Below, piece by piece: positions 1 through 48,522 of a DNA stretch of 64,000 nt; position 1 is the first letter of the stretch, and each line of letters opens with the position of its first letter. The DNA lies in the NCBI RefSeq assembly GCF_031769215.1, contig NW_026782092.1, forward strand, positions 620,001-684,000. Direction: 5' to 3'. Below the pieces are notes generated by a model. It was not told the origin of the DNA. It searched no databases and saw nothing but the letters and a program-made list of their open reading frames with translations. The position numbers and the translations under genes were made by a program. The stretch comes from Ylistrum balloti (Eukaryota).

Positions 1-1740
1 AACACTATCTTTGATGCAAAACGTCTAATTGGTCGGAAATACGATGACCATAATGTCCAGTCGGACATGAAACACTGGCCATTTACGGTGGTCAGTAGCT
101 CCGGTAAACCAACGATTCAGGTGAACAGCAAATGCGACACCAAGCAGTTTACACCAGAGGAAATCAGCTCCATGGTGCTTACTAAAATGAAGGAGACGGC
201 TGAAGCTTTCCTTGGTGAAAAGGTCAAGGATGCTGTGATCACTGTACCAGCCTACTTCAATGACTCCCAGAGACAGGCGACAAAGGACGCTGGGATCATC
301 GCCGGACTGAACGTCCTGAGAATTGTCAATGAACCAACGGCTGCTGCGCTGGCCTATGGACTAGACAAGAACCTCAAAGACGAGAAAAATGTCCTCATCT
401 TTGATTTGGGAGGAGGAACATTTGATGTGTCCATTTTGACGATCGACGAAGGATCGATATTCGAGGTTAAAGCTACTGCTGGTGACACACATTTAGGTGG
501 AGAAGATTTCGACAACAGAGTTGTGAACCATTTCGTACAGGAGTTTAAACGGAAATATGGAAAAGACTTGAGTAAGAACAGCAGGGCTTTACGAAGGCTT
601 CGCACCGCATGTGAACGTGCCAAACGAACCCTTTCGAGCAGCAGCGAAGCAAGTATAGAAATCGACTCTCTGTTTGAGGGAATCGATTTCTACAGTAAAC
701 TCACCAGAGCTAGATTTGAGGACTTGTGTTCTGATCTTTTCCGTGCTACTCTAGAGCCTGTGGAAAAGGCACTTCGTGATGCTAAGATGGACAAATCGAA
801 AATCCACGAGATTGTCTTAGTTGGCGGATCTACACGTATACCAAAGATCCAAAAGATGCTCGAAGATTTCATGAACGGAAAACAGCTCAACAAATCTATC
901 AATCCTGACGAAGCTGTAGCGTATGGTGCTGCAGTTCAAGCTGCCGTTCTTACCGGCGACAGCAGTGACGTCATCAAGGACGTCCTTCTGGTGGACGTGG
1001 CTCCACTGTCCCTCGGAATAGAAACAGCTGGAGGTGTGATGACCAAACTGATCGAAAGGAACACTAGAATTCCCACGAAAACATCTCAAACGTTTACTAC
1101 GTATTCTGATAACCAGCCCGGTGTCAGTATCCAGGTGTTCGAGGGAGAACGAGTCATGACAAAGGACAATAATCAACTGGGAAGGTTTGAACTAAACGGC
1201 ATCCCACCTGCACCCAGAGGTGTTCCACAAATCGAGGTCCAATTCGACATCGATGCTAATGGAATCCTCAATGTGTCGGCTGAGGATAAAAGTACTGGGA
1301 AATCCAACAAAATCACCATCACAAACGACAGGGGACGTTTGAGTAAAGAAGACATTGAGAAAATGGTAGCCGACGCAGAAAAATACAAAGACGAGGACGA
1401 GAAACAGAGGAAAAGAGTTTCTGCCAGAAATCAGCTGGAGAACTACATTTTCAGTGTCAAACAGGCGATGGAAAATGTTGGTGACAAACTTTCATCAGAG
1501 GAAAAATCCACTGTGTGTCAGGGATGTGAGGACAATTTGAAGTGGTTGGACAGTAACACTATGGCGGACGTGGAGGAATACGAATATAAACTAAAGGAAT
1601 TTCAAAAACTGTGTTCACCTATCATGACGAAACTTCACGGGAGTTCACCACAGTCAAATGGCGGGGCACCCAGTGGAGGTTGTGGTAGAGAAGCACAAGG
1701 AGGGTCAAGTACTGGCCCGACGGTAGAGGAAGTGTACTGA
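1..1740 (+). CDS. hsp70: Heat shock protein 70, copy 1 (5'-truncated by window edge)
   Basis: Frame +1 is open from base 1 (NTIFDAKR...). Carries signatures [14 protein letters not shown] and [15 protein letters not shown] and ends GPTVEEVY*. Private K>T change at 112-114. Confidence 0.97.
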
Positions 1741-6220: not shown

Positions 6221-6795
6221 GGTGCCTAATCACAAAGCTAACCTGAATTGACTCGGGAAGTTTCTAGATTAATCGGTCGTTCTAGAACGTTTTCGATTAT
6301 TTACAAATGACACATATATCAATTTATTAAATTTTAATTTAATTAATTATTCTTTGATGAAAACTAAGACGTTAAAAACAGCTTAATGTCCCTTTCATAA
6401 TTTTAAGCACCAAAATGAACTGCTTGTATGCAGATGTAATATGTCTGACATTAATATGTTAATATGTTTATACAAGTATCATATGGAAATATTCATTGAC
6501 ATATACGATGTATATACTAAACATTAATTACGTAAACTAATCTTCAATGAATTGAAATTGACTACGTTTAGAAAAACTTCTTTTTGTCAGATTACTTTAA
6601 TATACTTTAATGTTTCTGCGAAACGTATGATGTAGTATGCCCCCTTGAGGTGCCTCATAACAAGGCTGACCTAAATTCATTCGGGAAGTTTCTAGACCAA
6701 TCGAATCACTGGAACGCTCTCGATTATCTAGATCATTCAAGAAAGTATACTATAGTAGGGTATATAAACATGGTGCACACAAGCTGTGATCAGAA
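6221..6795 (+). promoter_or_regulatory. HSP70 copy 2 promoter: distal and proximal HSE modules, TATA box, Inr-like site
   Basis: Distal HSEs GAAgtTTCtaGAT (6257-6269) and TTCtaGAAcgTTTtcGAT (6280-6297). Proximal HSEs TTCggGAAgtTTCtaGAC (6680-6697) and GATcaTTCaaGAA (6731-6743). TATATAAA at 6761-6768 and TCAGAA about 30 nt downstream (6790-6795). Confidence 0.88.
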
Positions 6796-6956: not shown

Positions 6957-8897
6957 ATGGCAGGCTCACGTAAATCTCCAGCTATTGGAATTGACCTCGG
7001 CACAACATATTCCTGTGTCGGAGTATTCCAACATGGGAAGGTGGAGATTATTGCCAACGACCAGGGAAACAGGACCACGCCTAGTTACGTGGCCTTTACG
7101 GACACGGAGAGACTGATCGGAGACGCTGCCAAGGGCCAAGTAGCAATGAACCCACAGAACACTATCTTTGATGCAAAACGTCTAATTGGTCGGAAATACG
7201 ATGACCATAATGTCCAGTCGGACATGAAACACTGGCCATTTACGGTGGTCAGTAGCTCCGGTAAACCAAAGATTCAGGTGAACAGCAAATGCGACACCAA
7301 GCAGTTTACACCAGAGGAAATCAGCTCCATGGTGCTTACTAAAATGAAGGAGACGGCTGAAGCTTTCCTTGGTGAAAAGGTCAAGGATGCCGTGATCACT
7401 GTACCAGCCTACTTCAATGACTCCCAGAGACAGGCGACAAAGGACGCTGGGATCATCGCCGGACTGAACGTCCTGCGAATTGTCAATGAACCAACGGCTG
7501 CTGCGCTGGCCTATGGACTAGACAAGAACCTCAAAGACGAGAAAAATGTCCTCATCTTTGATTTGGGAGGAGGAACATTTGATGTGTCCATTTTGACGAT
7601 CGACGAAGGATCGATATTCGAGGTTAAAGCTACTGCTGGTGACACACATTTAGGTGGAGAAGACTTCGACAACAGAGTTGTGAACCATTTCGTACAGGAG
7701 TTTAAACGGAAATATGGAAAAGACTTGAGTAAGAACAGCAGGGCTTTACGAAGGCTTCGCACCGCATGTGAACGTGCCAAACGAACCCTTTCGAGCAGCA
7801 GCGAAGCAAGTATAGAAATCGACTCTCTGTTTGAGGGAATCGATTTCTACAGTAAACTCACCAGAGCTAGATTTGAGGACTTGTGTTCTGATCTTTTCCG
7901 TGCTACTCTAGAGCCTGTGGAAAAGGCACTTCGTGATGCTAAGATGGACAAATCGAAAATCCACGAGATTGTCTTAGTTGGCGGATCTACACGTATACCA
8001 AAGATCCAAAAGATGCTCGAAGATTTCATGAACGGAAAACAGCTCAACAAATCCATCAATCCTGACGAAGCTGTAGCGTATGGTGCTGCAGTTCAAGCTG
8101 CCGTTCTTACCGGCGACAGCAGTAACGTCATCAAGGACGTCCTTCTGGTGGACGTGGCTCCACTGTCCCTCGGAATAGAAACAGCTGGAGGTGTGATGAC
8201 CAAACTGATCGAAAGGAACACTAGAATTCCCACGAAAACATCTCAAACGTTTACTACGTATTCTGATAACCAGCCCGGTGTCAGTATCCAGGTGTTCGAG
8301 GGAGAACGAGTCATGACAAAGGACAATAATCAACTGGGAAGGTTTGAACTAAACGGCATCCCACCTGCACCCAGAGGTGTTCCACAAATCGATGTCCAAT
8401 TCGACATCGATGCTAATGGAATCCTCAATGTGTCGGCTGAGGATAAAAGTACTGGGAAATCCAACAAAATCACCATCACAAACGACAGGGGACGTTTGAG
8501 TAAAGAAGACATTGAGAAAATGGTAGCCGACGCAGAAAAATACAAAGACGAGGACGAGAAACAGAGGAAAAGAGTTTCTGCCAGAAATCAGCTGGAGAAC
8601 TACATTTTCAGTGTCAAACAGGCGATGGAAAATGTTGGTGACAAACTTTCATCAGAGGAAAAATCCACTGTGTGTCAGGGATGTGAGGACAATTTGAAGT
8701 GGTTGGACAGTAACACTATGGCGGACGTGGAGGAATACGAATATAAACTAAAGGAATTTCAAAAACTGTGTTCACCTATCATGACGAAACTTCACGGGAG
8801 TTCACCACAGTCAAATGGCGGGGCACCCAGTGGAGGTTGTGGTAGAGAAGCACAAGGAGGGTCAAGTACTGGCCCGACGGTAGAGGAAGTGTACTGA
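6957..8897 (+). CDS. hsp70: Heat shock protein 70, inducible cytosolic type, copy 2
   Basis: Intronless 646-aa ORF from ATG 6957 (the track's TTG start at 6945 is upstream). Signatures [37 protein letters not shown]; no GGMP repeats; HSE/TATA promoter. Confidence 0.98.
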
Positions 8898-10490: not shown

Positions 10491-12686
10491 TTAAGGTATA
10501 CACATCACAAAAACCTGAAAACACATGTCCGTGTTCACAACTGATGATACATCCAGAGTCAGTGTTCCCCCTTTTTTTTTCTTCTTCTTCTTCTTTGTTC
10601 GAGACAGTGGCCCAACAATATCCATAGATATTTTGTAAAATGGCTCACTGATGATCGGTGGTTGTCCTAATGGAGCTTTCTCATCACCACGTCTTCTGGC
10701 GGTCTTTTGACATACGTTACAAGTACTACAATACTCTCGTATGTCCTTAAAAATCCCTGGCCAACAGAACGCATTAACGACACGCTCTTTGGTCTTTTCT
10801 ATCCCTAAATGTCCCGCAAGTGGTCTATCATGTCCCAATTTAATGATATTGAGACGTAGTGCCTCTGGTAGTACTACCTGGACTCCATGTTGGGCTCCAT
10901 CACTAGACTCCCATTTCCTACGGAGAATCCCATTTTCCCGGTACAGGGCATTCCTATCTTCCTGCACAGATTCCTCTGAACTTGCAGCTTTTCTCCGAAT
11001 GTTGGCTAAAGTTGGATCTTCCTGCTGAAGCTTACTAAGCACTTCAGCATTTACAGCAGAAAGTTCAAGCGGTTCCTCTGTTGTGATGTTAACTGTATCA
11101 TCCCCATTGCTGTGGGATACAGTCTCACTGATGTTGTCAATGTCCTCACCAACGCCATCGCCATGGTCCAGGTCCACATCGTTCGCCTGTCCAACATCAC
11201 TTCCCTTACTGGCATCCACTTGGTCCGTGTCGGGGTCCATTCCAACTTTTACATGGCATTCCTTTGCCTTGTCCTCAGCTAGCCTTTCTTCAGCAATGTT
11301 ATTACGATGTTGTGCACGCGTAACAACATTCACAGCCTTTGATTGTCTCTCTATGATGTCTACCCCCAACAGGGCTTCAGCGACAAGGTCAGGCACTAAT
11401 CCGACCTGAGCATGTCCCTTATAATATGGCGTGTCCATATCAACGATAGCCAGTTTGGCTGAAAACGGCTGTCCAGTCGCTGTACACAGCGTCTCCCGCT
11501 GACCCTCCAATACACAACTTGGGTCCACCAGGTCTTCCCTAATCAAGGTCATCGCTGACCCAGTGTCTTTCACGAAACTAATATCACGGCCATTGACCTC
11601 TCCTGGGACATGGATAAGTCCTCCCGTGTATTGTCGCACTAAAAATCCTGCAAGATTTTTACCTTCTCTGTTTTTTGGACATTTCCTCGCGAAGTGCCCG
11701 TACTTGTTACAATTGTAACACTGCACACTTTTCATTTGCTCTGTCGATTGCTCCTTTCTCTGGTCCCGATCAGAGGTAAAAGTTTTTCCATTTATACTTT
11801 TACCTTGCGTTGATTTGTTTATATTCCGTTCAGGTAGAATATAATCCTCTGCGGCTTCAACCACACTGCTTGACCCTTTGTTACGGCGTATCCATTGTGC
11901 TTGTGACACTGGCAATGCACTAAGAAAATATTCCTCTTTGAATTTTTCCATGACATCCTCTACTGAGTCCACAAATCTAGTAAGATATTGTTCAATTCTT
12001 GCCATAAGTCCTCTGTATGTTTCCTTAGGTTCCCTTTGGGCTGTCTGTAATAGCTTGAAATATTGGTAGGGCCTTTTCCCGTACCTGTCCATTAGGGCTT
12101 TACAAAGTTCTTCAAATGACCCGTGTGCTTGAATAGCTACCTCTCTGGCCTCACCTGTTAACAAGGTTCTCAGCTGTAGCATTTTTACTTCTTCTGTCCA
12201 TCCAGCCTGTGTTGATAAAGCAGTAAACTCTGATAAGAATGTCACTATATCCTCACTTTCAGTATGATTATAAGGTTGAAGTTTCAGTCTAAACGGCACA
12301 GGGTTAGAATTTGTCTCACACCGTTCCTTTTGAAGTTTTGCTTTTTCAATCTCTAGTTCCAATTCTTTCACTTTCCTTTGATGTTCTCTTTCCTTTTCTT
12401 CGGCGTCCATTCTTATCTTTTCTCTTTCCACTTCCCTTTGATGTTCTCTTTCCTTTTCTTCGGCGTCCATTCTCATCTTTTCTCTTTCAACTTCCATCGT
12501 CATCCTTTCTCTTTCGAAATTCATTTGGCGTTCTTTTTCCTCTTTCTCTGCTTGAAGTTTTTCTTTTTCTAAGTTCATTTGGCGTTCTTTTTCCTCTTTC
12601 TCTGCTTGAATTTCGAGTCTTCTTATTTCCAACTTTGTTTGTGCTGCCGTCATCTTCGCAGTTTCCGTTTCTTCAGTCGTCGACAT
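10491..12686 (-). CDS. Gag (coiled coil + SCAN-like capsid + CCHC) - aspartic protease - truncated integrase polyprotein, 731 aa
   Basis: EEYFLSALPVSQAQWIRR (SCAN/capsid-like), CYNCNKYGHFARKC, VKDTGS (protease DTG), GHDRPLAGHLG...CSTCNVC (integrase H2C2) and MDIVGP (first catalytic Asp). The ORF then breaks into a poly-Lys tract and a short unrelated tail. Confidence 0.9.
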   Translation of the reverse strand: MSTTEETETAKMTAAQTKLEIRRLEIQAEKEEKERQMNLEKEKLQAEKEEKERQMNFERERMTMEVEREKMRMDAEEKEREHQREVEREKIRMDAEEKEREHQRKVKELELEIEKAKLQKERCETNSNPVPFRLKLQPYNHTESEDIVTFLSEFTALSTQAGWTEEVKMLQLRTLLTGEAREVAIQAHGSFEELCKALMDRYGKRPYQYFKLLQTAQREPKETYRGLMARIEQYLTRFVDSVEDVMEKFKEEYFLSALPVSQAQWIRRNKGSSSVVEAAEDYILPERNINKSTQGKSINGKTFTSDRDQRKEQSTEQMKSVQCYNCNKYGHFARKCPKNREGKNLAGFLVRQYTGGLIHVPGEVNGRDISFVKDTGSAMTLIREDLVDPSCVLEGQRETLCTATGQPFSAKLAIVDMDTPYYKGHAQVGLVPDLVAEALLGVDIIERQSKAVNVVTRAQHRNNIAEERLAEDKAKECHVKVGMDPDTDQVDASKGSDVGQANDVDLDHGDGVGEDIDNISETVSHSNGDDTVNITTEEPLELSAVNAEVLSKLQQEDPTLANIRRKAASSEESVQEDRNALYRENGILRRKWESSDGAQHGVQVVLPEALRLNIIKLGHDRPLAGHLGIEKTKERVVNAFCWPGIFKDIREYCSTCNVCQKTARRRGDEKAPLGQPPIISEPFYKISMDIVGPLSRTKKKKKKKKGGTLTLDVSSVVNTDMCFQVFVMCIP
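12370..12610 (-). repeat. In-frame tandem repeats in Gag N-terminus (60-bp x2 and 54-bp x~1.7)
   Basis: Period 60 at 12370-12495 (RMDAEEKEREHQR twice) and period 54 at 12520-12610 (AEKEEKERQMN twice). Confidence 0.85.
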
Positions 12687-17062: not shown

Positions 17063-19003
17063 ATGGCAGGCTCACGTAAATCTCCAGCTATTGGAATTGA
17101 CCTCGGCACCACATATTCCTGTGTCGGAGTATTCCAACATGGGAAGGTGGAGATTATTGCCAACGACCAGGGAAACAGGACCACGCCTAGTTACGTGGCC
17201 TTTACGGACACGGAGAGACTGATCGGAGACGCTGCCAAGGGCCAAGTAGCAATGAACCCACAGAACACTATCTTTGATGCAAAACGTCTAATTGGTCGGA
17301 AATACGATGACCATAATGTCCAGTCGGACATGAAACACTGGCCATTTACGGTGGTCAGTAGCTCCGGTAAACCAAAGATTCAGGTGAACAGCAAATGCGA
17401 CACCAAGCAGTTTACACCAGAGGAAATCAGCTCCATGGTGCTTACTAAAATGAAGGAGACGGCTGAAGCTTTCCTTGGTGAAAAGGTCAAGGATGCTGTG
17501 ATCACTGTACCAGCCTACTTCAATGACTCCCAGAGACAGGCGACAAAGGACGCTGGGATCATCGCCGGACTGAACGTCCTGCGAATTGTCAATGAACCAA
17601 CGGCTGCTGCGCTGGCCTATGGACTAGACAAGAACCTCAAAGACGAGAAAAATGTCCTCATCTTTGATTTGGGAGGAGGAACATTTGATGTGTCCATTTT
17701 GACGATCGACGAAGGATCGATATTCGAGGTTAAAGCTACTGCTGGTGACACACATTTAGGTGGAGAAGATTTCGACAACAGAGTTGTGAACCATTTCGTA
17801 CAGGAGTTTAAACGGAAATATGGAAAAGACTTGAGTAAGAACAGCAGGGCTTTACGAAGGCTTCGCACCGCATGTGAACGTGCCAAACGAACCCTTTCGA
17901 GCAGCAGCGAAGCAAGTATAGAAATCGACTCTCTGTTTGAGGGAATCGATTTCTACAGTAAACTCACCAGAGCTAGATTTGAGGACTTGTGTTCTGATCT
18001 TTTCCGTGCTACTCTAGAGCCTGTGGAAAAGGCACTTCGTGATGCTAAGATGGACAAATCGAAAATCCACGAGATTGTCTTAGTTGGCGGATCTACACGT
18101 ATACCAAAGATCCAAAAGATGCTCGAAGATTTCATGAACGGAAAACAGCTCAACAAATCCATCAATCCTGACGAAGCTGTAGCGTATGGTGCTGCAGTTC
18201 AAGCTGCCGTTCTTACCGGCGACAGCAGTGACGTCATCAAGGACGTCCTTCTGGTGGACGTGGCTCCACTGTCCCTCGGAATAGAAACAGCTGGAGGTGT
18301 GATGACCAAACTGATCGAAAGGAACACTAGAATTCCCACGAAAACATCTCAAACGTTTACTACGTATTCTGATAACCAGCCCGGTGTCAGTATCCAGGTG
18401 TTCGAGGGAGAACGAGTCATGACAAAGGACAATAATCAACTGGGAAGGTTTGAACTAAACGGCATCCCACCTGCACCCAGAGGTGTTCCACAAATCGAGG
18501 TCCAATTCGACATCGATGCTAATGGAATCCTCAATGTGTCGGCTGAGGATAAAAGTACTGGGAAATCCAACAAAATCACCATCACAAACGACAGGGGACG
18601 TTTGAGTAAAGAAGACATTGAGAAAATGGTAGCCGACGCAGAAAAATACAAAGATGAGGACGAGAAACAGAGGAAAAGAGTTTCTGCCAGAAATCAGCTG
18701 GAGAACTACATTTTCAGTGTCAAACAGGCGATGGAAAATGTTGGTGACAAACTTTCATCAGAGGAAAAATCCACTGTGTGTCAGGGATGTGAGGACAATT
18801 TGAAGTGGTTGGACAGTAACACTATGGCGGACGTGGAGGAATACGAATATAAACTAAAGGAATTTCAAAAACTGTGTTCACCTATCATGACGAAACTTCA
18901 CGGGAGTTCACCACAGTCAAATGGCGGGGCACCCAGTGGAGGTTGTGGTAGAGAAGCACAAGGAGGGTCAAGTACTGGCCCGACGGTAGAGGAAGTGTAC
19001 TGA
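17063..19003 (+). CDS. hsp70: Heat shock protein 70, copy 3
   Basis: Intact 646-aa ORF with the same signatures as copy 2. Confidence 0.98.
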
Positions 19004-23918: not shown

Positions 23919-25859
23919 ATGGCAGGCTCACGTAAATCTCCAGCTATTGGAATTGACCTCGGCACCACATATTCCTGTGTCGGAGTATTCCAACATGGGA
24001 AGGTGGAGATTATTGCCAACGACCAGGGAAACAGGACCACGCCTAGTTACGTGGCCTTTACGGACACGGAGAGACTGATCGGAGACGCTGCCAAGGGCCA
24101 AGTAGCAATGAACCCACAGAACACTATCTTTGATGCAAAACGTCTAATTGGTCGGAAATACGATGACCATAATGTCCAGTCGGACATGAAACACTGGCCA
24201 TTTACGGTGGTCAGTAGCTCCGGTAAACCAAAGATTCAGGTGAACAGCAAATGCGACACCAAGCAGTTTACACCAGAGGAAATCAGCTCCATGGTGCTTA
24301 CTAAAATGAAGGAGACGGCTGAAGCTTTCCTTGGTGAAAAGGTCAAGGATGCTGTGATCACTGTACCAGCCTACTTCAATGACTCCCAGAGACAGGCGAC
24401 AAAGGACGCTGGGATCATCGCCGGACTGAACGTCCTGCGAATTGTCAATGAACCAACGGCTGCTGCGCTGGCCTATGGACTAGACAAGAACCTCAAAGAC
24501 GAGAAAAATGTCCTCATCTTTGATTTGGGAGGAGGAACATTTGATGTGTCCATTTTGACGATCGACGAAGGATCGATATTCGAGGTTAAAGCTACTGCTG
24601 GTGACACACATTTAGGTGGAGAAGATTTCGACAACAGAGTTGTGAACCATTTCGTACAGGAGTTTAAACGGAAATATGGAAAAGACTTGAGTAAGAACAG
24701 CAGGGCTTTACGAAGGCTTCGCACCGCATGTGAACGTGCCAAACGAACCCTTTCGAGCAGCAGCGAAGCAAGTATAGAAATCGACTCTCTGTTTGAGGGA
24801 ATCGATTTCTACAGTAAACTCACCAGAGCTAGATTTGAGGACTTGTGTTCTGATCTTTTCCGTGCTACTCTAGAGCCTGTGGAAAAGGCACTTCGTGATG
24901 CTAAGATGGACAAATCGAAAATCCACGAGATTGTCTTAGTTGGCGGATCTACACGTATACCAAAGATCCAAAAGATGCTCGAAGATTTCATGAACGGAAA
25001 ACAGCTCAACAAATCCATCAATCCTGACGAAGCTGTAGCGTATGGTGCTGCAGTTCAAGCTGCCGTTCTTACCGGCGACAGCAGTGACGTCATCAAGGAC
25101 GTCCTTCTGGTGGACGTGGCTCCACTGTCCCTCGGAATAGAAACAGCTGGAGGTGTGATGACCAAACTGATCGAAAGGAACACTAGAATTCCCACGAAAA
25201 CATCTCAAACGTTTACTACGTATTCTGATAACCAGCCCGGTGTCAGTATCCAGGTGTTCGAGGGAGAACGAGTCATGACAAAGGACAATAATCAACTGGG
25301 AAGGTTTGAACTAAACGGCATCCCACCTGCACCCAGAGGTGTTCCACAAATCGAGGTCCAATTCGACATCGATGCTAATGGAATCCTCAATGTGTCGGCT
25401 GAGGATAAAAGTACTGGGAAATCCAACAAAATCACCATCACAAACGACAGGGGACGTTTGAGTAAAGAAGACATTGAGAAAATGGTAGCCGACGCAGAAA
25501 AATACAAAGATGAGGACGAGAAACAGAGGAAAAGAGTTTCTGCCAGAAATCAGCTGGAGAACTACATTTTCAGTGTCAAACAGGCGATGGAAAATGTTGG
25601 TGACAAACTTTCATCAGAGGAAAAATCCACTGTGTGTCAGGGATGTGAGGACAATTTGAAGTGGTTGGACAGTAACACTATGGCGGACGTGGAGGAATAC
25701 GAATATAAACTAAAGGAATTTCAAAAACTGTGTTCACCTATCATGACGAAACTTCACGGGAGTTCACCACAGTCAAATGGCGGGGCACCCAGTGGAGGTT
25801 GTGGTAGAGAAGCACAAGGAGGGTCAAGTACTGGCCCGACGGTAGAGGAAGTGTACTGA
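23919..25859 (+). CDS. hsp70: Heat shock protein 70, copy 4
   Basis: Intact 646-aa ORF, protein identical to copy 3. Confidence 0.98.
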
Positions 25860-29125: not shown

Positions 29126-31066
29126 ATGGCAGGCTCACGTAAATCTCCAGCTATTGGAATTGACCTCGGCACCACATATTCCTGTGTCGGAGTATTCCAA
29201 CATGGGAAGGTGGAGATTATTGCCAACGACCAGGGAAACAGGACCACGCCTAGTTACGTGGCCTTTACGGACACGGAGAGACTGATCGGAGACGCTGCCA
29301 AGGGCCAAGTAGCAATGAACCCACAGAACACTATCTTTGATGCAAAACGTCTAATTGGTCGGAAATACGATGACCATAATGTCCAGTCGGACATGAAACA
29401 CTGGCCATTTACGGTGGTCAGTAGCTCCGGTAAACCAAAGATTCAGGTGAACAGCAAATGCGACACCAAGCAGTTTACACCAGAGGAAATCAGCTCCATG
29501 GTGCTTACTAAAATGAAGGAGACGGCTGAAGCTTTCCTTGGTGAAAAGGTCAAGGATGCTGTGATCACTGTACCAGCCTACTTCAATGACTCCCAGAGAC
29601 AGGCGACAAAGGACGCTGGGATCATCGCCGGACTGAACGTCCTGCGAATTGTCAATGAACCAACGGCTGCTGCGCTGGCCTATGGACTAGACAAGAACCT
29701 CAAAGACGAGAAAAATGTCCTCATCTTTGATTTGGGAGGAGGAACATTTGATGTGTCCATTTTGACGATCGACGAAGGATCGATATTCGAGGTTAAAGCT
29801 ACTGCTGGTGACACACATTTAGGTGGAGAAGATTTCGACAACAGAGTTGTGAACCATTTCGTACAGGAGTTTAAACGGAAATATGGAAAAGACTTGAGTA
29901 AGAACAGCAGGGCTTTACGAAGGCTTCGCACCGCATGTGAACGTGCCAAACGAACCCTTTCGAGCAGCAGCGAAGCAAGTATAGAAATCGACTCTCTGTT
30001 TGAGGGAATCGATTTCTACAGTAAACTCACCAGAGCTAGATTTGAGGACTTGTGTTCTGATCTTTTCCGTGCTACTCTAGAGCCTGTGGAAAAGGCACTT
30101 CGTGATGCTAAGATGGACAAATCGAAAATCCACGAGATTGTCTTAGTTGGCGGATCTACACGTATACCAAAGATCCAAAAGATGCTCGAAGATTTCATGA
30201 ACGGAAAACAGCTCAACAAATCCATCAATCCTGACGAAGCTGTAGCGTATGGTGCTGCAGTTCAAGCTGCCGTTCTTACCGGCGACAGCAGTGACGTCAT
30301 CAAGGACGTCCTTCTGGTGGACGTGGCTCCACTGTCCCTCGGAATAGAAACAGCTGGAGGTGTGATGACCAAACTGATCGAAAGGAACACTAGAATTCCC
30401 ACGAAAACATCTCAAACGTTTACTACGTATTCTGATAACCAGCCCGGTGTCAGTATCCAGGTGTTCGAGGGAGAACGAGTCATGACAAAGGACAATAATC
30501 AACTGGGAAGGTTTGAACTAAACGGCATCCCACCTGCACCCAGAGGTGTTCCACAAATCGAGGTCCAATTCGACATCGATGCTAATGGAATCCTCAATGT
30601 GTCGGCTGAGGATAAAAGTACTGGGAAATCCAACAAAATCACCATCACAAACGACAGGGGACGTTTGAGTAAAGAAGACATTGAGAAAATGGTAGCCGAC
30701 GCAGAAAAATACAAAGATGAGGACGAGAAACAGAGGAAAAGAGTTTCTGCCAGAAATCAGCTGGAGAACTACATTTTCAGTGTCAAACAGGCGATGGAAA
30801 ATGTTGGTGACAAACTTTCATCAGAGGAAAAATCCACTGTGTGTCAGGGATGTGAGGACAATTTGAAGTGGTTGGACAGTAACACTATGGCGGACGTGGA
30901 GGAATACGAATATAAACTAAAGGAATTTCAAAAACTGTGTTCACCTATCATGACGAAACTTCACGGGAGTTCACCACAGTCAAATGGCGGGGCACCCAGT
31001 GGAGGTTGTGGTAGAGAAGCACAAGGAGGGTCAAGTACTGGCCCGACGGTAGAGGAAGTGTACTGA
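29126..31066 (+). CDS. hsp70: Heat shock protein 70, copy 5
   Basis: Intact 646-aa ORF, protein identical to copy 3. Confidence 0.98.
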
Positions 31067-32025
31067 TCATTTTGCTATTGCTAGTCATTGTAAATTGAAA
31101 AGGACAATCTTGAATATTATATTACCATGTATTTGATTTTTATATGTGTGTTTTACATATACAACGAGGACATTATGTGATAGTTTATTATTTTAATGGT
31201 ATTCTATGTGCAATTAAATTGTGATGTACAGTCAACAAATGTTGATAGATCTTGTTTGAATGAATCATACTCTGTTTAAGCAGTTATTTTTGTCGTTTTT
31301 ATATTGTTATTCAATAAAATTGTTAAAATAAATATCAGGTTTTTCTTGTTTTTCTGTATTACATATAATGTCTTATACAACTGAGTCCTATTGAATTCGA
31401 TATGAAATAAAAAAAAAACAACAACATCTTATTCTATTACAAACATAGGAAGGGAAACGCCGGAGTAACGTGGTGTGAATAAGAGTGTAAAAAAATACAC
31501 ACATTGAAATCAACCAGTCGGCCATTCATCCAGCGTTTCATCTCTAGGACTCTCGCAACTAAATTAGCCAATGAGCGTCTTAGATTATGTTTCATCTAAT
31601 TGCAATCCTTATTTAAATTCATATTTGGTAAAAAAGTGTGCTCTGTTGAGGTTTTCAATTGATTATAGACGAGAGATGAAAGAGGTTCTAAGAAGTATTT
31701 GATTTCATGAAAATGTAAAGTTTTAATATTTTTCAATATTTGTGAGCGGACTTAGACAGGTGTAAAACAAACACCAAGAATATACCAACATGACAACATA
31801 ATTATAATTCAAAATCTACTTCCATTAAACTAGGGCAAAATATGAACAAAATAAATATTTTTAACGGAGACTTAAAAGACTGAGACTGAAAAAGCACAAG
31901 GAGAATAAGGCCAGGTGTTCCAGAGGAGTAAGTGTCTAGTAAACCTTGGTCAATTCAATTAAATAAAGTTACATTCTCAAATGAGAACTAGGTATACAAC
32001 AACGGAACCAACAGGCAAACTAACG

Positions 32026-32947
32026 TTCTTCTATCCTGGAGTGAATTGAAAAGTGATGATCATCAGTCTGATATTTTAAATTATGTCACCATAAAGCATT
32101 TTAAAAATATTTAAATTATGACGAAAAGGGATTTAAAACAATTAGGGATTTTCTAGATGAAAATTTACTATTTTTACCATTTAATCAAATAAAAGAAGTC
32201 TGTCATAATCTAAATTTTCTGCAATATTTTGCCTTCATTAATAAAATACCAAAGGAAACAACTGAATCCATACGAATCACAGATAACAATGATGGAGATC
32301 TAGAGACACATCTACACAAGCTACTAACTAGAACAGACCATAAATACATTTACCACTCCGTGTTACAAAAGCAAAAATACTACCCTGCATCTAAACAAAG
32401 AGAAATGGAAAAGAGATCTGGGCATAAATAATGAAAATACCTTAAACTGGGGAAAAATATATACACTGTAGTGTTTGTTTTTAAAACATGTCCAGATACA
32501 AAAACTACAAAATTTTCAATTTAAACTCTTACATAGAATTTTAACCACAAATAAATTTCTATACAGAATTAAAATTGTAAGAGGTGAAAATTGTACTTTC
32601 TGTGAAAAAGAACAAGAATCTTTAACACACCTCTTTTATCAATGTGAAAACGTATATACATCATGGGAAGATTTAAAACAGTGGTTAAACAACATGCAAA
32701 AAATATCGCAATTTATGAATGGGACATAAAGGGAATTTTAATTTATTATAATGATTTTATTTTGATTAATCACTTGATATTAATAACAAAATAGTATATA
32801 TACACTTGTCGCTTTAGGAATGTAAAACCATCCTTCCCATGGCTTAAATCTGTAATCTCTGTACAGTAGGAAGTTGAACGGAAAATTGCCTTTGAAAACA
32901 AATCTTTTATCAATTTTGAGGCTAAGTGGTCTCCCCTTGACATTTAA
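32026..32947 (+). mobile_element. Decayed Tx1/L1-clade LINE fragment (short unit 5-6)
   Basis: As 26821-27741. Confidence 0.83.
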
Positions 32948-33595
32948 GTCGGGTCATCTTCTTTTAATATCCAGAATACAGAATAATCCCTCCTGACAAC
33001 CTTTTCATAGTCTCATGAGTCTGATACGTATACCCTGTTTCAAACTTACTAAGATTTCTTTATGCATATAATATTAGTAAAAAAAGCCCTTATATATAAC
33101 ACTGAGTTTTTTTCCCTTTTTTTTCTTTGTTATTCTTGTCATGTATCTATCTGTGTCTATATATATATATATAACTATATATGTTTGTAAATCACATCTA
33201 CATATGAGTTATTTTTAACATTTCATGTGACTATCAGTAGGTAATTTGCCAGTAATTATAATGATATAATATTCTACATGAATTGATACCTGATATTGAG
33301 TTTAAGATTTTTTGCAGACCATGCATACCACTCGTACTTGTTTCTTTGATATATTAAATGTAATATTTGTCTCTGTCTAAAACCTAGCAGGAAGCCTGGA
33401 CCTGTTGGGTGTTTATGTATGCAGGTATGTTTTGTTTTGTGGTGTCAATGACAAAAAGACATTATTTGACATTATACCTCATGAATCAATTACAAATTAA
33501 GGAAACCTCACGTATTTTATCTTTTGATCATAACTACTGTCTCAAGTGTCAATATTATGGTATTATACGATAAACGTGCAGATTTGCATCCTTAG

Positions 33596-34170
33596 GGTGC
33601 CTAATCACAAAGCTAACCTGAATTGACTCGGGAAGTTTCTAGATTAATCGGTCGTTCTAGAACGTTTTCGATTATTTACAAATGACACATATATCAATTT
33701 ATTAAATTTTAATTTAATTAATTATTCTTTGATGAAAACTAAGACGTTAAAAACAGCTTAATGTCCCTTTCATAATTTTAAGCACCAAAATGAACTGCTT
33801 GTATGCAGATGTAATATGTCTGACATTAATATGTTAATATGTTTATACAAGTATCATATCGAAATATTCATTGACATATACGATGTATATACTAAACATT
33901 AATTACGTAAACTAATCTTCAATGAATTGAAATTGACTACGTTTAGAAAAACTTCTTTTTGTCAGATTACTTTAATATACTTTAATGTTTCTGCGAAACG
34001 TATGATGTAGTATGCCCCCTTGAGGTGCCTCATAACAAGGCTGACCTAAATTCATTCGGGAAGTTTCTAGACCAATCGAATCACTGGAACGCTCTCGATT
34101 ATCTAGATCATTCAAGAAAGTATACTATAGTAGGGTATATAAACATGGTGCACACAAGCTGTGATCAGAA
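33596..34170 (+). promoter_or_regulatory. HSP70 copy 6 promoter (two HSE modules + TATA)
   Basis: Same motifs as copy 2; TATATAAA at 34136. Confidence 0.87.
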
Positions 34171-34331
34171 TCAGAAAAGAAGTTCGACACTTCTACTTGG
34201 AATACACACACAGCGGACTTAATACACGGTAGTGTGTATATATATCCAGCCTTTAGCGAGCGAGGGAGTGATCGACACGCAATACCTAAACAACAATAAC
34301 TCTACTTTCGATTTGACATTTGAAGACGAAT

Positions 34332-36272
34332 ATGGCAGGCTCACGTAAATCTCCAGCTATTGGAATTGACCTCGGCACCACATATTCCTGTGTCGGAGTA
34401 TTCCAACATGGGAAGGTGGAGATTATTGCCAACGACCAGGGAAACAGGACCACGCCTAGTTACGTGGCCTTTACGGACACGGAGAGACTGATCGGAGACG
34501 CTGCCAAGGGCCAAGTAGCAATGAACCCACAGAACACTATCTTTGATGCAAAACGTCTAATTGGTCGGAAATACGATGACCATAATGTCCAGTCGGACAT
34601 GAAACACTGGCCATTTACGGTGGTCAGTAGCTCCGGTAAACCAAAGATTCAGGTGAACAGCAAATGCGACACCAAGCAGTTTACACCAGAGGAAATCAGC
34701 TCCATGGTGCTTACTAAAATGAAGGAGACGGCTGAAGCTTTCCTTGGTGAAAAGGTCAAGGATGCTGTGATCACTGTACCAGCCTACTTCAATGACTCCC
34801 AGAGACAGGCGACAAAGGACGCTGGGATCATCGCCGGACTGAACGTCCTGCGAATTGTCAATGAACCAACGGCTGCTGCGCTGGCCTATGGACTAGACAA
34901 GAACCTCAAAGACGAGAAAAATGTCCTCATCTTTGATTTGGGAGGAGGAACATTTGATGTGTCCATTTTGACGATCGACGAAGGATCGATATTCGAGGTT
35001 AAAGCTACTGCTGGTGACACACATTTAGGTGGAGAAGATTTCGACAACAGAGTTGTGAACCATTTCGTACAGGAGTTTAAACGGAAATATGGAAAAGACT
35101 TGAGTAAGAACAGCAGGGCTTTACGAAGGCTTCGCACCGCATGTGAACGTGCCAAACGAACCCTTTCGAGCAGCAGCGAAGCAAGTATAGAAATCGACTC
35201 TCTGTTTGAGGGAATCGATTTCTACAGTAAACTCACCAGAGCTAGATTTGAGGACTTGTGTTCTGATCTTTTCCGTGCTACTCTAGAGCCTGTGGAAAAG
35301 GCACTTCGTGATGCTAAGATGGACAAATCGAAAATCCACGAGATTGTCTTAGTTGGCGGATCTACACGTATACCAAAGATCCAAAAGATGCTCGAAGATT
35401 TCATGAACGGAAAACAGCTCAACAAATCCATCAATCCTGACGAAGCTGTAGCGTATGGTGCTGCAGTTCAAGCTGCCGTTCTTACCGGCGACAGCAGTGA
35501 CGTCATCAAGGACGTCCTTCTGGTGGACGTGGCTCCACTGTCTCTCGGAATAGAAACAGCTGGAGGTGTGATGACCAAACTGATCGAAAGGAACACTAGA
35601 ATTCCCACGAAAACATCTCAAACGTTTACTACGTATTCTGATAACCAGCCCGGTGTCAGTATCCAGGTGTTCGAGGGAGAACGAGTCATGACAAAGGACA
35701 ATAATCAACTGGGAAGGTTTGAACTAAACGGCATCCCACCTGCACCCAGAGGTGTTCCACAAATCGAGGTCCAATTCGACATCGATGCTAATGGAATCCT
35801 CAATGTGTCGGCTGAGGATAAAAGTACTGGGAAATCCAACAAAATCACCATCACAAACGACAGGGGACGTTTGAGTAAAGAAGACATTGAGAAAATGGTA
35901 GCCGACGCAGAAAAATACAAAGATGAGGACGAGAAACAGAGGAAAAGAGTTTCTGCCAGAAATCAGCTGGAGAACTACATTTTCAGTGTCAAACAGGCGA
36001 TGGAAAATGTTGGTGACAAACTTTCATCAGAGGAAAAATCCACTGTGTGTCAGGGATGTGAGGACAATTTGAAGTGGTTGGACAGTAACACTATGGCGGA
36101 CGTGGAGGAATACGAATATAAACTAAAGGAATTTCAAAAACTGTGTTCACCTATCATGACGAAACTTCACGGGAGTTCACCACAGTCAAATGGCGGGGCA
36201 CCCAGTGGAGGTTGTGGTAGAGAAGCACAAGGAGGGTCAAGTACTGGCCCGACGGTAGAGGAAGTGTACTGA
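34332..36272 (+). CDS. hsp70: Heat shock protein 70, copy 6
   Basis: Intact 646-aa ORF, protein identical to copy 3. Confidence 0.98.
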
Positions 36273-39532: not shown

Positions 39533-41473
39533 ATGGCAGGCTCACGTAAATCTCCAGCTATTGGAATTGACCTCGGCACAACATATTCCTGTGTCGGAGT
39601 ATTCCAACATGGGAAGGTGGAGATTATTGCCAACGACCAGGGAAACAGGACCACGCCTAGTTACGTGGCCTTTACGGACACGGAGAGACTGATCGGAGAC
39701 GCTGCCAAGGGCCAAGTAGCAATGAACCCACAGAACACTATCTTTGATGCAAAACGTCTAATTGGTCGGAAATACGATGACCATAATGTCCAGTCGGACA
39801 TGAAACACTGGCCATTTACGGTGGTCAGTAGCTCCGGTAAACCAAAGATTCAGGTGAACAGCAAATGCGACACCAAGCAGTTTACACCAGAGGAAATCAG
39901 CTCCATGGTGCTTACTAAAATGAAGGAGACGGCTGAAGCTTTCCTTGGTGAAAAGGTCAAGGATGCTGTGATCACTGTACCAGCCTACTTCAATGACTCC
40001 CAGAGACAGGCGACAAAGGACGCTGGGATCATCGCCGGACTGAACGTCCTGCGAATTGTCAATGAACCAACGGCTGCTGCGCTGGCCTATGGACTAGACA
40101 AGAACCTCAAAGACGAGAAAAATGTCCTCATCTTTGATTTGGGAGGAGGAACATTTGATGTGTCCATTTTGACGATCGACGAAGGATCGATATTCGAGGT
40201 TAAAGCTACTGCTGGTGACACACATTTAGGTGGAGAAGATTTCGACAACAGAGTTGTGAACCATTTCGTACAGGAGTTTAAACGGAAATATGGAAAAGAC
40301 TTGAGTAAGAACAGCAGGGCTTTACGAAGGCTTCGCACCGCATGTGAACGTGCCAAACGAACCCTTTCGAGCAGCAGCGAAGCAAGTATAGAAATCGACT
40401 CTCTGTTTGAGGGAATCGATTTCTACAGTAAACTCACCAGAGCTAGATTTGAGGACTTGTGTTCTGATCTTTTCCGTGCTACTCTAGAGCCTGTGGAAAA
40501 GGCACTTCGTGATGCTAAGATGGACAAATCGAAAATCCACGAGATTGTCTTAGTTGGCGGATCTACACGTATACCAAAGATCCAAAAGATGCTCGAAGAT
40601 TTCATGAACGGAAAACAGCTCAACAAATCTATCAATCCTGACGAAGCTGTAGCGTATGGTGCTGCAGTTCAAGCTGCCGTTCTTACCGGCGACAGCAGTG
40701 ACGTCATCAAGGACGTCCTTCTGGTGGACGTGGCTCCACTGTCCCTCGGAATAGAAACAGCTGGAGGTGTGATGACCAAACTGATCGAAAGGAACACTAG
40801 AATTCCCACGAAAACATCTCAAACGTTTACTACGTATTCTGATAACCAGCCCGGTGTCAGTATCCAGGTGTTCGAGGGAGAACGAGTCATGACAAAGGAC
40901 AATAATCAACTGGGAAGGTTTGAACTAAACGGCATCCCACCTGCACCCAGAGGTGTTCCACAAATCGAGGTCCAATTCGACATCGATGCTAATGGAATCC
41001 TCAATGTGTCGGCTGAGGATAAAAGTACTGGGAAATCCAACAAAATCACCATCACAAACGACAGGGGACGTTTGAGTAAAGAAGACATTGAGAAAATGGT
41101 AGCCGACGCAGAAAAATACAAAGATGAGGACGAGAAACAGAGGAAAAGAGTTTCTGCCAGAAATCAGCTGGAGAACTACATTTTCAGTGTCAAACAGGCG
41201 ATGGAAAATGTTGGTGACAAACTTTCATCAGAGGAAAAATCCACTGTGTGTCAGGGATGTGAGGACAATTTGAAGTGGTTGGACAGTAACACTATGGCGG
41301 ACGTGGAGGAATACGAATATAAACTAAAGGAATTTCAAAAACTGTGTTCACCTATCATGACGAAACTTCACGGGAGTTCACCACAGTCAAATGGCGGGGC
41401 ACCCAGTGGAGGTTGTGGTAGAGAAGCACAAGGAGGGTCAAGTACTGGCCCGACGGTAGAGGAAGTGTACTGA
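39533..41473 (+). CDS. hsp70: Heat shock protein 70, copy 7
   Basis: Intact 646-aa ORF, protein identical to copy 3. Confidence 0.98.
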
Positions 41474-46581: not shown

Positions 46582-48522
46582 ATGGCAGGCTCACGTAAAT
46601 CTCCAGCTATTGGAATTGACCTCGGCACCACATATTCCTGTGTCGGAGTATTCCAACATGGGAAGGTGGAGATTATTGCCAACGACCAGGGAAACAGGAC
46701 CACGCCTAGTTACGTGGCCTTTACGGACACGGAGAGACTGATCGGAGACGCTGCCAAGGGCCAAGTAGCAATGAACCCACAGAACACTATCTTTGATGCA
46801 AAACGTCTAATTGGTCGGAAATACGATGACCATAATGTCCAGTCGGACATGAAACACTGGCCATTTACGGTGGTCAGTAGCTCCGGTAAACCAAAGATTC
46901 AGGTGAACAGCAAATGCGACACCAAGCAGTTTACACCAGAGGAAATCAGCTCCATGGTGCTTACTAAAATGAAGGAGACGGCTGAAGCTTTCCTTGGTGA
47001 AAAGGTCAAGGATGCCGTGATCACTGTACCAGCCTACTTCAATGACTCCCAGAGACAGGCGACAAAGGACGCTGGGATCATCGCCGGACTGAACGTCCTG
47101 CGAATTGTCAATGAACCAACGGCTGCTGCGCTGGCCTATGGACTAGACAAGAACCTCAAAGACGAGAAAAATGTCCTCATCTTTGATTTGGGAGGAGGAA
47201 CATTTGATGTGTCCATTTTGACGATCGACGAAGGATCGATATTCGAGGTTAAAGCTACTGCTGGTGACACACATTTAGGTGGAGAAGATTTCGACAACAG
47301 AGTTGTGAACCATTTCGTACAGGAGTTTAAACGGAAATATGGAAAAGACTTGAGTAAGAACAGCAGGGCTTTACGAAGGCTTCGCACCGCATGTGAACGT
47401 GCCAAACGAACCCTTTCGAGCAGCAGCGAAGCAAGTATAGAAATCGACTCTCTGTTTGAGGGAATCGATTTCTACAGTAAACTCACCAGAGCTAGATTTG
47501 AGGACTTATGTTCTGATCTTTTCCGTGCTACTCTAGAGCCTGTGGAAAAGGCACTTCGTGATGCTAAGATGGACAAATCGAAAATCCACGAGATTGTCTT
47601 AGTTGGCGGATCTACACGTATACCAAAGATCCAAAAGATGCTCGAAGATTTCATGAACGGAAAACAGCTCAACAAATCCATCAATCCTGACGAAGCTGTA
47701 GCGTATGGTGCTGCAGTTCAAGCTGCCGTTCTTACCGGCGACAGCAGTGACGTCATCAAGGACGTCCTTCTGGTGGACGTGGCTCCACTGTCCCTCGGAA
47801 TAGAAACAGCTGGAGGTGTGATGACCAAACTGATCGAAAGGAACACTAGAATTCCCACGAAAACATCTCAAACGTTTACTACGTATTCTGATAACCAGCC
47901 CGGTGTCAGTATCCAGGTGTTCGAGGGAGAACGAGTCATGACAAAGGACAATAATCAACTGGGAAGGTTTGAACTAAACGGCATCCCACCTGCACCCAGA
48001 GGTGTTCCACAGATCGAGGTCCAATTCGACATCGATGCTAATGGAATCCTCAATGTGTCGGCTGAGGATAAAAGTACTGGGAAATCCAATAAAATCACCA
48101 TCACAAACGACAGGGGACGTTTGAGTAAAGAAGACATTGAGAAAATGGTAGCCGACGCAGAAAAATACAAAGACGAGGACGAGAAACAGAGGAAAAGAGT
48201 TTCTGCCAGAAATCAGCTGGAGAACTACATTTTCAGTGTCAAACAGGCGATGGAAAATGTTGGTGACAAACTTTCATCAGAGGAAAAATCCACTGTGTGT
48301 CAGGGATGTGAGGACAATTTGAAGTGGTTGGACAGTAACACTATGGCGGACGTGGAGGAATACGAATATAAACTAAAGGAATTTCAAAAACTGTGTTCAC
48401 CTATCATGACGAAACTTCACGGGAGTTCACCACAGTCAAATGGCGGGGCACCCAGTGGAGGTTGTGGTAGAGAAGCACAAGGAGGGTCAAGTACTGGCCC
48501 GACGGTAGAGGAAGTGTACTGA
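46582..48522 (+). CDS. hsp70: Heat shock protein 70, copy 8 (terminal copy, unique 3' flank)
   Basis: Intact 646-aa ORF, protein identical to copy 3. Downstream sequence stops matching the other units about 14 nt after TGA. Confidence 0.98.

What the first reader, a model, noticed from the sequence alone, without database searches (positions are those of the whole stretch)
8883..8897. All eight HSP70 copies end in EEVY, not EEVD: a fixed change in the TPR co-chaperone docking motif
Seen: every copy ends GAG GAA GTG TAC TGA (GPTVEEVY*), one base (GAC>TAC) from EEVD; stops at 1740, 8897, 19003, 25859, 31066, 36272, 41473, 48522. Established: the terminal Asp side chain plus the C-terminal carboxylate form the two-carboxylate clamp ligand for TPR co-chaperones (Hop/STIP1, CHIP/STUB1, Tom70), and EEVD also contacts class-B J-proteins. 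Inference: this amplified, HSE-driven isoform may be uncoupled from HSP90 hand-off and CHIP degradation, making it a holdase/refoldase-biased stress chaperone. More speculatively, E-E-V-Y resembles the acidic Src-family substrate context, so Tyr phosphorylation could restore a terminal negative charge as a switchable EEVD mimic. The change could also be a mildly deleterious mutation fixed by array homogenization.
Basis: partly seen in the sequence, partly recalled or inferred. Interest (0 to 1): 0.75.

Follow-up and report, generated by a model that had tools for sequence, protein, structure and literature searches.

The report
Scallop heat-shock HSP70 ending in EEVY
A tandem array of heat-shock HSP70 genes in a scallop genome ends in EEVY instead of the near-universal EEVD, and this change is old, shared by other scallop genera and kept by selection, so it probably alters which helper proteins dock on this stress chaperone.

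Summary
GAGGAAGTGTACTGA occurs exactly eight times, always at the end of an intronless HSP70 gene. Seven genes are full length (646 aa) and one is cut by the window start. Contigs from four public DNA runs (three studies) show no difference at the TAC codon. No RNA run was found.

The window is a scallop (Pectinidae) contig. The genes sit in a head-to-tail array of 5.2-kb units that are 99.6-100% identical. Each full unit carries a heat-shock element and a TATA box.

EEVY is not private to this array. Orthologues and paralogues at three or more loci in Mizuhopecten, Pecten and Argopecten also end GPTVEEVY. All form one clade, whose sister is a scallop paralogue clade ending in D. Interspecific dS is 0.55-1.18 and dN/dS is 0.03-0.08. 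The linker before the motif varies freely while the motif does not. Keeping Tyr by chance has P of about 0.003. The reading 'deleterious change fixed by homogenisation' is therefore refuted.

Published peptide scans show CHIP needs the terminal Asp, whereas the class-B J-protein DnaJB4 does not. The likely effect is weaker TPR docking with J-protein docking kept. This is untested here. The phosphotyrosine-switch idea has no support.

Another first-stage note (s1-240805) flags the same motif in the overlapping upstream window.

The parts
8883..8897 (+). Terminal codons GAG GAA GTG TAC TGA (E-E-V-Y-stop) of HSP70 copy 2. The same 15-mer lies at 1726-1740, 18989-19003, 25845-25859, 31052-31066, 36258-36272, 41459-41473 and 48508-48522.
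   Evidence: independent DNA contigs show no difference
1..1740 (+). HSP70 copy 1, 5' end cut by the window start (580 codons seen)
6957..8897 (+). HSP70 copy 2, intronless 646-aa ORF (Pfam HSP70, 864.9 bits); carries N390 and D479 where the other copies have D and E
17063..19003 (+). HSP70 copy 3 (CDS identical to copies 4 and 5)
23919..25859 (+). HSP70 copy 4
29126..31066 (+). HSP70 copy 5
34332..36272 (+). HSP70 copy 6
39533..41473 (+). HSP70 copy 7
46582..48522 (+). HSP70 copy 8, the last of the array. No unit-like sequence of 200 nt or more follows it.
6680..6696 (+). Heat-shock element TTCGGGAAGTTTCTAGA, about 265-277 nt upstream of the ATG. The 13-nt core (as searched) starts again at 16786, 23642, 28849, 34055, 39261 and 46305. 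It is followed by a CCAAT box, further HSE-like blocks and the TATA box GTATATAA (about 6761-6768).
   Evidence: conserved in the promoters of all scallop EEVY genes (alignment A1)
31067..36272 (+). Reference 5.2-kb repeat unit (spacer, promoter and gene). The other units are 98.7-100% identical over the shared parts. Longer spacers come from insertions at unit position about 582-959.
10491..12686 (-). Retroelement ORF fragment (zinc knuckle, aspartyl protease, integrase H2C2) inserted in the spacer between copies 2 and 3

Best explanation
The window holds a recently amplified head-to-tail array of the classical heat-inducible, intronless cytosolic HSP70 of a scallop: eight copies here, with an unchecked first-stage note suggesting one more upstream. 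Its GPTVEEVY C-terminus is a real feature of this lineage. The terminal Asp changed to Tyr by one base (GAC to TAC) once, after a gene duplication. This happened in, or before, the common ancestor of the scallop genera sampled. It has been kept by purifying selection ever since, long before this array expanded. Inferred mechanism: Tyr removes the side-chain carboxylate that TPR 'two-carboxylate clamp' co-chaperones (CHIP, Hop TPR1) hold. The features used by class-B J-domain proteins are all kept: the free alpha-carboxylate, the two Glu (P3, P4), an aliphatic P5 (Val) and Pro at P7. This stress isoform would therefore still be activated by DNAJB-type partners for refolding and disaggregation, but would couple poorly to CHIP-mediated ubiquitination and Hop/HSP90 hand-off. 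D-ending paralogues (GPII[D/E/H]E[L/M]D) and the cognate HSC70 (EEVD) would keep TPR coupling. Shown here: the sequence, the DNA confirmation, the distribution, monophyly, selection, and the promoter and array anatomy. Inferred: every binding consequence.
For: The motif occurs 8 times out of 8, and independent DNA contigs agree. The nearest relatives (91-93% identity) are Mizuhopecten yessoensis, Pecten maximus and Argopecten irradians proteins ending GPTVEEVY. Of 180 full-length relatives recovered, 167 end in D; the 10 ending in Y are all scallop. In other scallops the EEVY genes lie at three or more different loci, as single genes or divergent pairs. The window array shares its dynein-heavy-chain neighbour with the Mizuhopecten single gene. 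With the tail columns removed, the EEVY genes form one clade (SH-aLRT 94). That clade sits inside a scallop clade (98) whose other branch is D-ending scallop paralogues. dN/dS is 0.03-0.08 at dS 0.55-1.18. The dS tree length is 2.21, giving P of about 0.003 that Tyr is kept on all branches if neutral. The 25 residues before the motif vary freely, while GPTVEEVY does not. Synonymous sites inside the motif and the stop codon (TAA/TGA) differ between species. D646Y is the only clade-specific change at a site that is invariant in 128/128 other sequences. HSE and TATA blocks are conserved in all EEVY-gene promoters. Literature: CHIP needs P1, P2, P5 and the carboxylate. DnaJB4 needs the carboxylate, P5 (Val slightly better than Ile), P3, P4 and P7, and is not sensitive to Ala at P1 (PMC8913300). 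A scallop HSPA8 and HSP90 keep EEVD (PMC11750468).
Against: No binding, expression or heat-induction data exist for this protein, and no RNA run was found. The published scans used human CHIP and DnaJB4 with Ala at P1, not Tyr and not scallop partners. PfHsp70-x, ending EEVN, still binds human Hop in vitro, so a non-Asp terminus need not abolish TPR binding. Scallop TPR domains might have co-adapted. All Tyr codons are TAC (no TAT), so selection on Tyr rests on a rate argument and not on an observed synonymous change. One Mizuhopecten copy has TAG instead of TAC and ends in EEV, so loss of the Tyr is at least tolerated in one copy, or is an assembly error or rare allele. Absence of EEVY outside scallops is only as good as a word-indexed search.
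Confidence: 0.55

Rival explanations
1. Functionally near-silent variant. TPR co-chaperones still bind EEVY adequately through the main-chain carboxylate, the P2 Val and the P5 Val, or scallop TPR domains have co-adapted. The isoform would then work like any EEVD HSP70, and Tyr is simply one acceptable residue.
For: PfHsp70-x, ending EEVN, still needs its tail to bind human Hop in vitro (PMC6282620). P2 and P5, which also matter for CHIP, are intact.
Against: The terminal Asp is invariant in 167 of 167 other full-length relatives with an intact tail, which argues that the side chain matters. Ala at P1 clearly weakens CHIP binding. Tyr has been kept across a dS tree length of 2.2 without reverting to Asp, a single-base step. 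That fits a selected new state better than a mere 'acceptable' one.
Confidence: 0.2
2. Gain of a new partner or switch. The C-terminal acidic-x-aromatic end is read by a different module: a CAP-Gly-type domain that reads C-terminal EEY/F ends, a PDZ-type domain, or a lineage-specific TPR. Alternatively it is modified (Tyr phosphorylation or removal), giving regulated docking.
For: Tyr itself, not just 'non-Asp', is conserved. C-terminal Tyr after acidic residues is a known docking signal on alpha-tubulin for CAP-Gly proteins (PMC2064338). One Mizuhopecten copy is genetically 'de-tyrosinated' (ends EEV).
Against: This is pure analogy. EEVY has Val, not Glu, next to the Tyr. No partner has been identified. 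A terminal Tyr lacks the downstream residues that tyrosine kinases normally use (my own knowledge). Nothing here tests modification.
Confidence: 0.12
3. Mildly deleterious or neutral mutation spread through this array by gene conversion or unequal crossing-over, or an assembly or consensus error copied across collapsed repeats.
For: Array units are 99.6-100% identical, non-coding DNA included, so homogenisation or recent amplification is real.
Against: The same ending is found in three other genera, at non-array loci and in other assemblies. It is also found in contigs of four runs from three studies. The clade is monophyletic and under strong purifying selection.
Confidence: 0.02

Closest known systems
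Canonical inducible cytosolic HSP70 (HSPA1A / Drosophila Hsp70-Hsp68 / molluscan 'HSP70 B2' type) ending GPT[IV]EEVD
   Same: Full-length Pfam HSP70 match. Intronless gene with an HSE and TATA promoter, multi-copy. 77-83% identical to oyster, mussel and mammalian inducible HSP70. The tail keeps G-P-T-V-E-E-V.
   Different: The last residue is Tyr, not Asp. In the set recovered here this ending is confined to one scallop clade and is conserved within it.
Plasmodium falciparum Hsp70-x (C-terminal EEVN)
   Same: A natural cytosolic-type HSP70 in which only the terminal Asp of EEVD is replaced. The tail is still functionally important (PMC6282620).
   Different: Asn is close in size and shape to Asp and still supports Hop binding in vitro. 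Tyr is bulky and aromatic. PfHsp70-x is an exported parasite protein, not the heat-shock-promoter isoform of an animal.
HSP70s that lack the EEVD motif altogether (plant truncated Hsp70T, Trypanosoma brucei Hsp70.c)
   Same: Cytosolic HSP70 lineages that have given up the standard TPR docking end (PMC10687569 and PMC8269394, abstracts).
   Different: Those lack the whole motif. Here seven of the eight tail residues, including all J-protein determinants, are strictly kept and only P1 is changed.
Scallop paralogue clade ending GPII[D/E/H]E[L/M]D (P0058, P0079, P0066)
   Same: Sister clade from the same scallop-specific duplication, 79% identical to the window protein.
   Different: Keeps the terminal Asp but varies P2, P4 and P6. 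The EEVY clade does the reverse.

Membership tests
HSP70 (Pfam PF00012), cytosolic HSPA1/HSP70-B2 type | Full-length match to the HSP70 profile (nucleotide-binding and substrate-binding domains) | tested here: met
   864.9 bits, residues 9-612 on profile positions 1-597 of 599
HSP70 (Pfam PF00012), cytosolic HSPA1/HSP70-B2 type | Groups with the inducible molluscan HSP70 B2 / HSP68-like genes in a tree | tested here: met
   Nested in bivalve HSP70 B2-like sequences; scallop clade support 98
HSP70 (Pfam PF00012), cytosolic HSPA1/HSP70-B2 type | Heat-shock promoter (HSE trimer plus TATA) and an intronless gene | tested here: met
   An uninterrupted ORF and the HSE TTCGGGAAGTTTCTAGA before each of the 7 full copies. 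HSE and TATA blocks are conserved in orthologues. Induction itself was not tested.
HSP70 (Pfam PF00012), cytosolic HSPA1/HSP70-B2 type | C-terminal EEVD | tested here: not met
   EEVY in all 8 copies
Ligand of carboxylate-clamp TPR co-chaperones (CHIP, Hop TPR1) | Terminal Asp side chain (P1) | tested here: not met
   P1 is Tyr. P1 is one of the three positions most important for CHIP (PMC8913300).
Ligand of carboxylate-clamp TPR co-chaperones (CHIP, Hop TPR1) | Free C-terminal carboxylate, P2 Val, aliphatic P5 | tested here: met
   The sequence ends ...V(P5)-E-E-V(P2)-Y-stop. Val is accepted at P5 by CHIP.
Ligand of carboxylate-clamp TPR co-chaperones (CHIP, Hop TPR1) | Measured binding to a TPR domain | not testable with these tools
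   Needs peptide binding assays
Ligand of class-B J-domain protein CTD-I (DnaJB1/DnaJB4/Sis1) | Free carboxylate, P5 Ile/Val/Leu/Phe/Tyr, P3 and P4 Glu, P7 Pro | tested here: met
   P(P7)-T-V(P5)-E(P4)-E(P3)-V-Y is present and invariant across the clade. The requirements are from PMC8913300. Binding itself was not tested.
C-terminal EEY/F ligands of CAP-Gly domains | C-terminal aromatic residue directly preceded by acidic residues | tested here: inconclusive
   A terminal Tyr is present, but Val, not Glu, precedes it. This is an analogy only (PMC2064338).

The most novel reading that the evidence does not exclude
After a scallop-specific duplication of the inducible HSP70, the two ways of reading the EEVD tail were split between the daughters. 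The EEVY clade keeps every J-protein determinant (carboxylate, P3/P4 Glu, P5 Val, P7 Pro) and has lost the TPR determinant (P1 Asp). The sister clade GPII[D/E/H]E[L/M]D keeps the TPR determinants (P1 Asp, hydrophobic P2 and P5) and has relaxed a J-protein determinant (P4). This would be a natural separation-of-function pair: a 'refold/disaggregate' HSP70 and a 'triage/hand-off' HSP70.
Probability: 0.25. Interest if true: 0.7.

Novelty: new variant of a known kind. Interest (0 to 1): 0.5.

Why it matters
The EEVD end is one of the most conserved short motifs in eukaryotic proteostasis, and two classes of co-chaperone (TPR proteins and class-B J-proteins) compete for it. Here a whole animal family has kept a Tyr in place of the Asp in its main heat-shock HSP70 across a synonymous divergence of about one substitution per site, while keeping D-ending paralogues. 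That makes it a ready-made natural separation-of-function allele. It lets one ask with simple peptide and refolding assays what a stress HSP70 gains by escaping CHIP and Hop while still working with DNAJB partners. The locus is also relevant to thermal tolerance in farmed scallops, because in this genome the EEVY gene has been amplified to at least eight near-identical HSE-driven copies.

Tried and rejected
- **Literature:** a full-text search for 'EEVY' with HSP70 found no paper. A first search with match 'anywhere' returned only surnames.
- **Scallop HSP papers:** those read or searched do not mention the variant. One heat-stress paper on Chlamys farreri heart does not mention HSP70 at all.
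- **RNA evidence:** two run searches found only DNA or unknown-type runs kept as contigs. Transcription, heat induction and the TAC codon in mRNA could therefore not be checked.
- **EEVY outside scallops:** a word search on the C-terminal 87 residues gave only 75 candidates, and none outside scallops ends in Y. The word index needs several shared 5-mers, so distant EEVY proteins could be missed.
- **Enlarging the D-ending sister clade:** a tail-region search with P0079 recovered no further members, so that clade rests on three sequences.
- **Ravalin et al. 2019 (all-residue scan of CHIP ligands):** not held in the library.
- **Strict HSE trimers:** found only in the window and its syntenic Mizuhopecten orthologue. 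The alignment showed that the other promoters carry the same blocks with one or two changes.
- **Rejected readings:** assembly artefact; private homogenised mutation.

Full report
**Observation.** None is expected by chance. Each occurrence closes an HSP70 reading frame ending ...[10 protein letters not shown].
- Seven frames are complete intronless ORFs of 646 aa counted from the ATG (for example 6957-8897). The first is cut by the window start.
- The protein gives a full-length Pfam HSP70 match of 864.9 bits.
- The copies differ by 0-7 nt in 1941 nt and by at most three residues. Three copies are identical.

**Check in reads.** Two run searches found no RNA run. Assembled contigs of four runs were laid on the gene; they come from three studies and carry two organism labels.
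- Contigs span 7064-8906, and no other letter is listed at 8892-8894 (TAC).
- A second contig type diverges on both sides of 8843-8885. It continues '...AAGTGTACTGATAATTTT', so another paralogue or allele in the same animals also ends VY-stop.
- Contigs hide rare variants. This shows the codon is the common state in independent DNA samples, not that no other allele exists.

**What and where.** The nearest proteins, at 91-93% identity, are 'heat shock protein 68-like / 70 B2-like' of the scallops Mizuhopecten yessoensis, Pecten maximus and Argopecten irradians. Oysters, mussels and other molluscs follow at about 80%. The window is part of a 1.04-Mb contig of assembly GCA_031769215.1.

The genes lie in a head-to-tail array.
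- The 5.2-kb unit is 99.6-100% identical between most copies, non-coding DNA included.
- Longer spacers come from insertions at one place in the unit. One insertion is a retroelement fragment at 10491-12686 on the minus strand.
- The array ends after the copy at 48522.
- A dynein heavy chain gene follows on the minus strand. The same neighbour follows the single Mizuhopecten gene P0011, so the array is an expansion of a syntenic locus.

Each full copy has the heat-shock element TTCGGGAAGTTTCTAGA about 270 nt upstream of the ATG, then a CCAAT box, further HSE-like blocks and GTATATAA. These blocks align in the promoters of all eight scallop EEVY genes examined, although synonymous divergence is near one substitution per site. 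The gene is therefore the classical heat-shock-promoter HSP70 of scallops. Induction itself was not tested.

**Distribution of EEVY.**
- Of the 120 best whole-protein hits, seven end in EEVY and all are scallop. One further Mizuhopecten protein ends in EEV. Everything else with an intact tail ends in D, as EEVD, EEMD, DEMD or similar.
- A second search seeded with words from the last 87 residues added 42 proteins from insects, chelicerates, gastropods and others. Of these, 41 end GPT[IV]EEVD and one lacks the motif altogether.
- Over all searches, of 180 roughly full-length relatives, 167 end in D and 10 end in Y, all scallop. One ends in V and two lack the tail altogether.
- The open-access literature holds no paper with both 'EEVY' and HSP70.

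**Age and selection.** In the other scallops the EEVY genes are not in arrays. There is a single gene next to dynein and a divergent pair next to a LIM gene in Mizuhopecten. Pecten has a single gene. Argopecten has a single gene next to the LIM gene and a divergent pair between short-chain dehydrogenase genes.
- A maximum-likelihood tree built without the tail columns puts all EEVY genes in one clade (SH-aLRT 94). That clade sits inside a scallop-only clade (98). The other branch of the scallop clade holds scallop paralogues ending GPIIEELD, GPIIDEMD and GPIIHELD.
- The D-to-Y change (GAC to TAC, one base) therefore arose once, after a scallop-specific duplication and before the Argopecten, Pecten and Mizuhopecten lineages split.
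- Pairwise dS between species is 0.55-1.18, with dN/dS of 0.03-0.08.
- A neighbour-joining tree in dS units has length 2.21. With equal rates, the chance that a neutral TAC codon still encodes Tyr on every branch is about 0.003.
- The 25 residues before the motif vary at most positions, whereas G-P-T-V-E-E-V-Y is fixed apart from one Thr-to-Ser change.
- Third positions inside the motif differ between species (GGC/GGT, CCA/CCT/CCG, ACT/ACA/ACG, GTG/GTT/GTA, GAA/GAG), and so does the stop codon (TAA/TGA).
- Against 128 D-ending relatives, only six positions are specific to the clade. D646Y is the only one at a site that is otherwise invariant.
- One exception exists. Mizuhopecten P0014 reads GTG TAG TGA where its neighbour reads GTG TAC TGA, so it ends in EEV. 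It may be a real allele or an error.

The change predates the array by a large margin and behaves as a selected state.

**Likely mechanism (inferred).** Johnson et al. 2022 (PMC8913300) scanned the human HSP70 tail.
- CHIP binding depends on the C-terminal carboxylate and on P1 (Asp), P2 (Val) and P5 (Ile). The two Glu are dispensable.
- DnaJB4 binding depends on the carboxylate and P5, with contributions from P3, P4 and P7. It is not sensitive to Ala at P1. Val at P5 binds it slightly better than Ile.
- GPTVEEVY keeps every J-protein determinant and loses one of the three main CHIP determinants.
- The best reading is a stress HSP70 that DNAJB-type partners can still activate, but that docks poorly on carboxylate-clamp TPR proteins (CHIP, probably Hop TPR1). 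This would bias it toward refolding and away from ubiquitination and HSP90 hand-off.
- Scallops keep EEVD on the cognate HSPA8 and on HSP90 (PMC11750468), and keep a D-ending inducible paralogue clade. The TPR system itself therefore remains in use.

**Caveats.** The published scans used Ala, not Tyr, and human proteins. PfHsp70-x ends in EEVN and still binds human Hop in vitro (PMC6282620). Scallop TPR domains may have co-adapted.

**Rivals.**
- A near-silent variant is possible, but it fits poorly with the invariance of Asp elsewhere and with the lack of reversion.
- A new partner or modification is pure analogy. One example is the CAP-Gly reading of C-terminal Tyr seen on alpha-tubulin (PMC2064338). 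Another is phosphorylation.
- The Src-like argument also ignores that the Tyr has no downstream residues (my own knowledge).
- Assembly artefact and private homogenised mutation are excluded.

**A lead worth testing.** The sister clade keeps P1 Asp and hydrophobic P2 and P5, but varies P4 (Glu, Asp or His) and P6. This is the mirror image of the EEVY clade. It suggests the two docking modes were divided between the paralogues. It rests on only three sister sequences, and a further search found no more.

**Verdict.** The protein is an ordinary inducible HSP70 in every respect tested except its last residue. That residue is an old, selected, scallop-wide variant of the EEVD motif that the searchable literature does not appear to describe. 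It is a new variant of a known kind, of moderate interest, and cheap to test.

Noticed in passing
L004:11936-11944 (Mizuhopecten yessoensis, protein P0014): One copy of a divergent EEVY pair reads GTG TAG TGA where its partner reads GTG TAC TGA. The Tyr codon is a stop and the protein ends in EEV. It may be a real 'Tyr-less' allele or an assembly error.
   Followed up: partly
window 1-48522: The 5.2-kb unit is 99.6-100% identical between most copies, non-coding DNA included. This points to very recent amplification or ongoing unequal crossing-over. The syntenic Mizuhopecten locus has one annotated gene, which may be a true single copy or a collapsed array in that assembly. An earlier first-stage note implies at least one more copy upstream of the window.
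   Followed up: partly
window 10491-12686 (- strand): A 731-aa retroelement ORF (zinc knuckle, aspartyl protease, integrase H2C2 zinc domain) with a run of Lys near its end. It is inserted in the spacer between copies 2 and 3 and appears truncated.
   Followed up: partly
window ~53700-64000 (- strand): Exons of a dynein heavy chain gene follow the array, according to the gene calls on locus L011. The same neighbour flanks the Mizuhopecten orthologue.
   Followed up: no
window protein residues 60, 81, 137, 301, 452 (copy 2, 6957-8897): Besides D646Y, only five residues set the EEVY clade apart from 128 D-ending relatives: N60G, F81Y, Y137F, I301L and A452V. I301L is shared with the sister clade. 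Their roles are unknown.
   Followed up: no
P0058, P0079, P0066 (scallop sister clade): These tails read GPIIEELD, GPIIDEMD and GPIIHELD. The terminal Asp is kept, but P2, P4 and P6 differ from the GPTVEEVD norm. This is the reverse of the pattern in the EEVY clade.
   Followed up: partly
window 8843-8885, in runs X3, X6 and X9: A second contig type (about 580 nt) matches only this stretch, then continues with a different 3'UTR after ...GTGTACTGA. This indicates a further EEVY paralogue or allele elsewhere in the same animals.
   Followed up: no
window protein residue ~628 (Cys in ...GGCGRE...): A Cys followed by Gly is conserved in the otherwise fast-evolving tail linker of all scallop EEVY proteins, and a similar CGQQ occurs in insect Hsp68/Hsp70 tails.
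   Followed up: no
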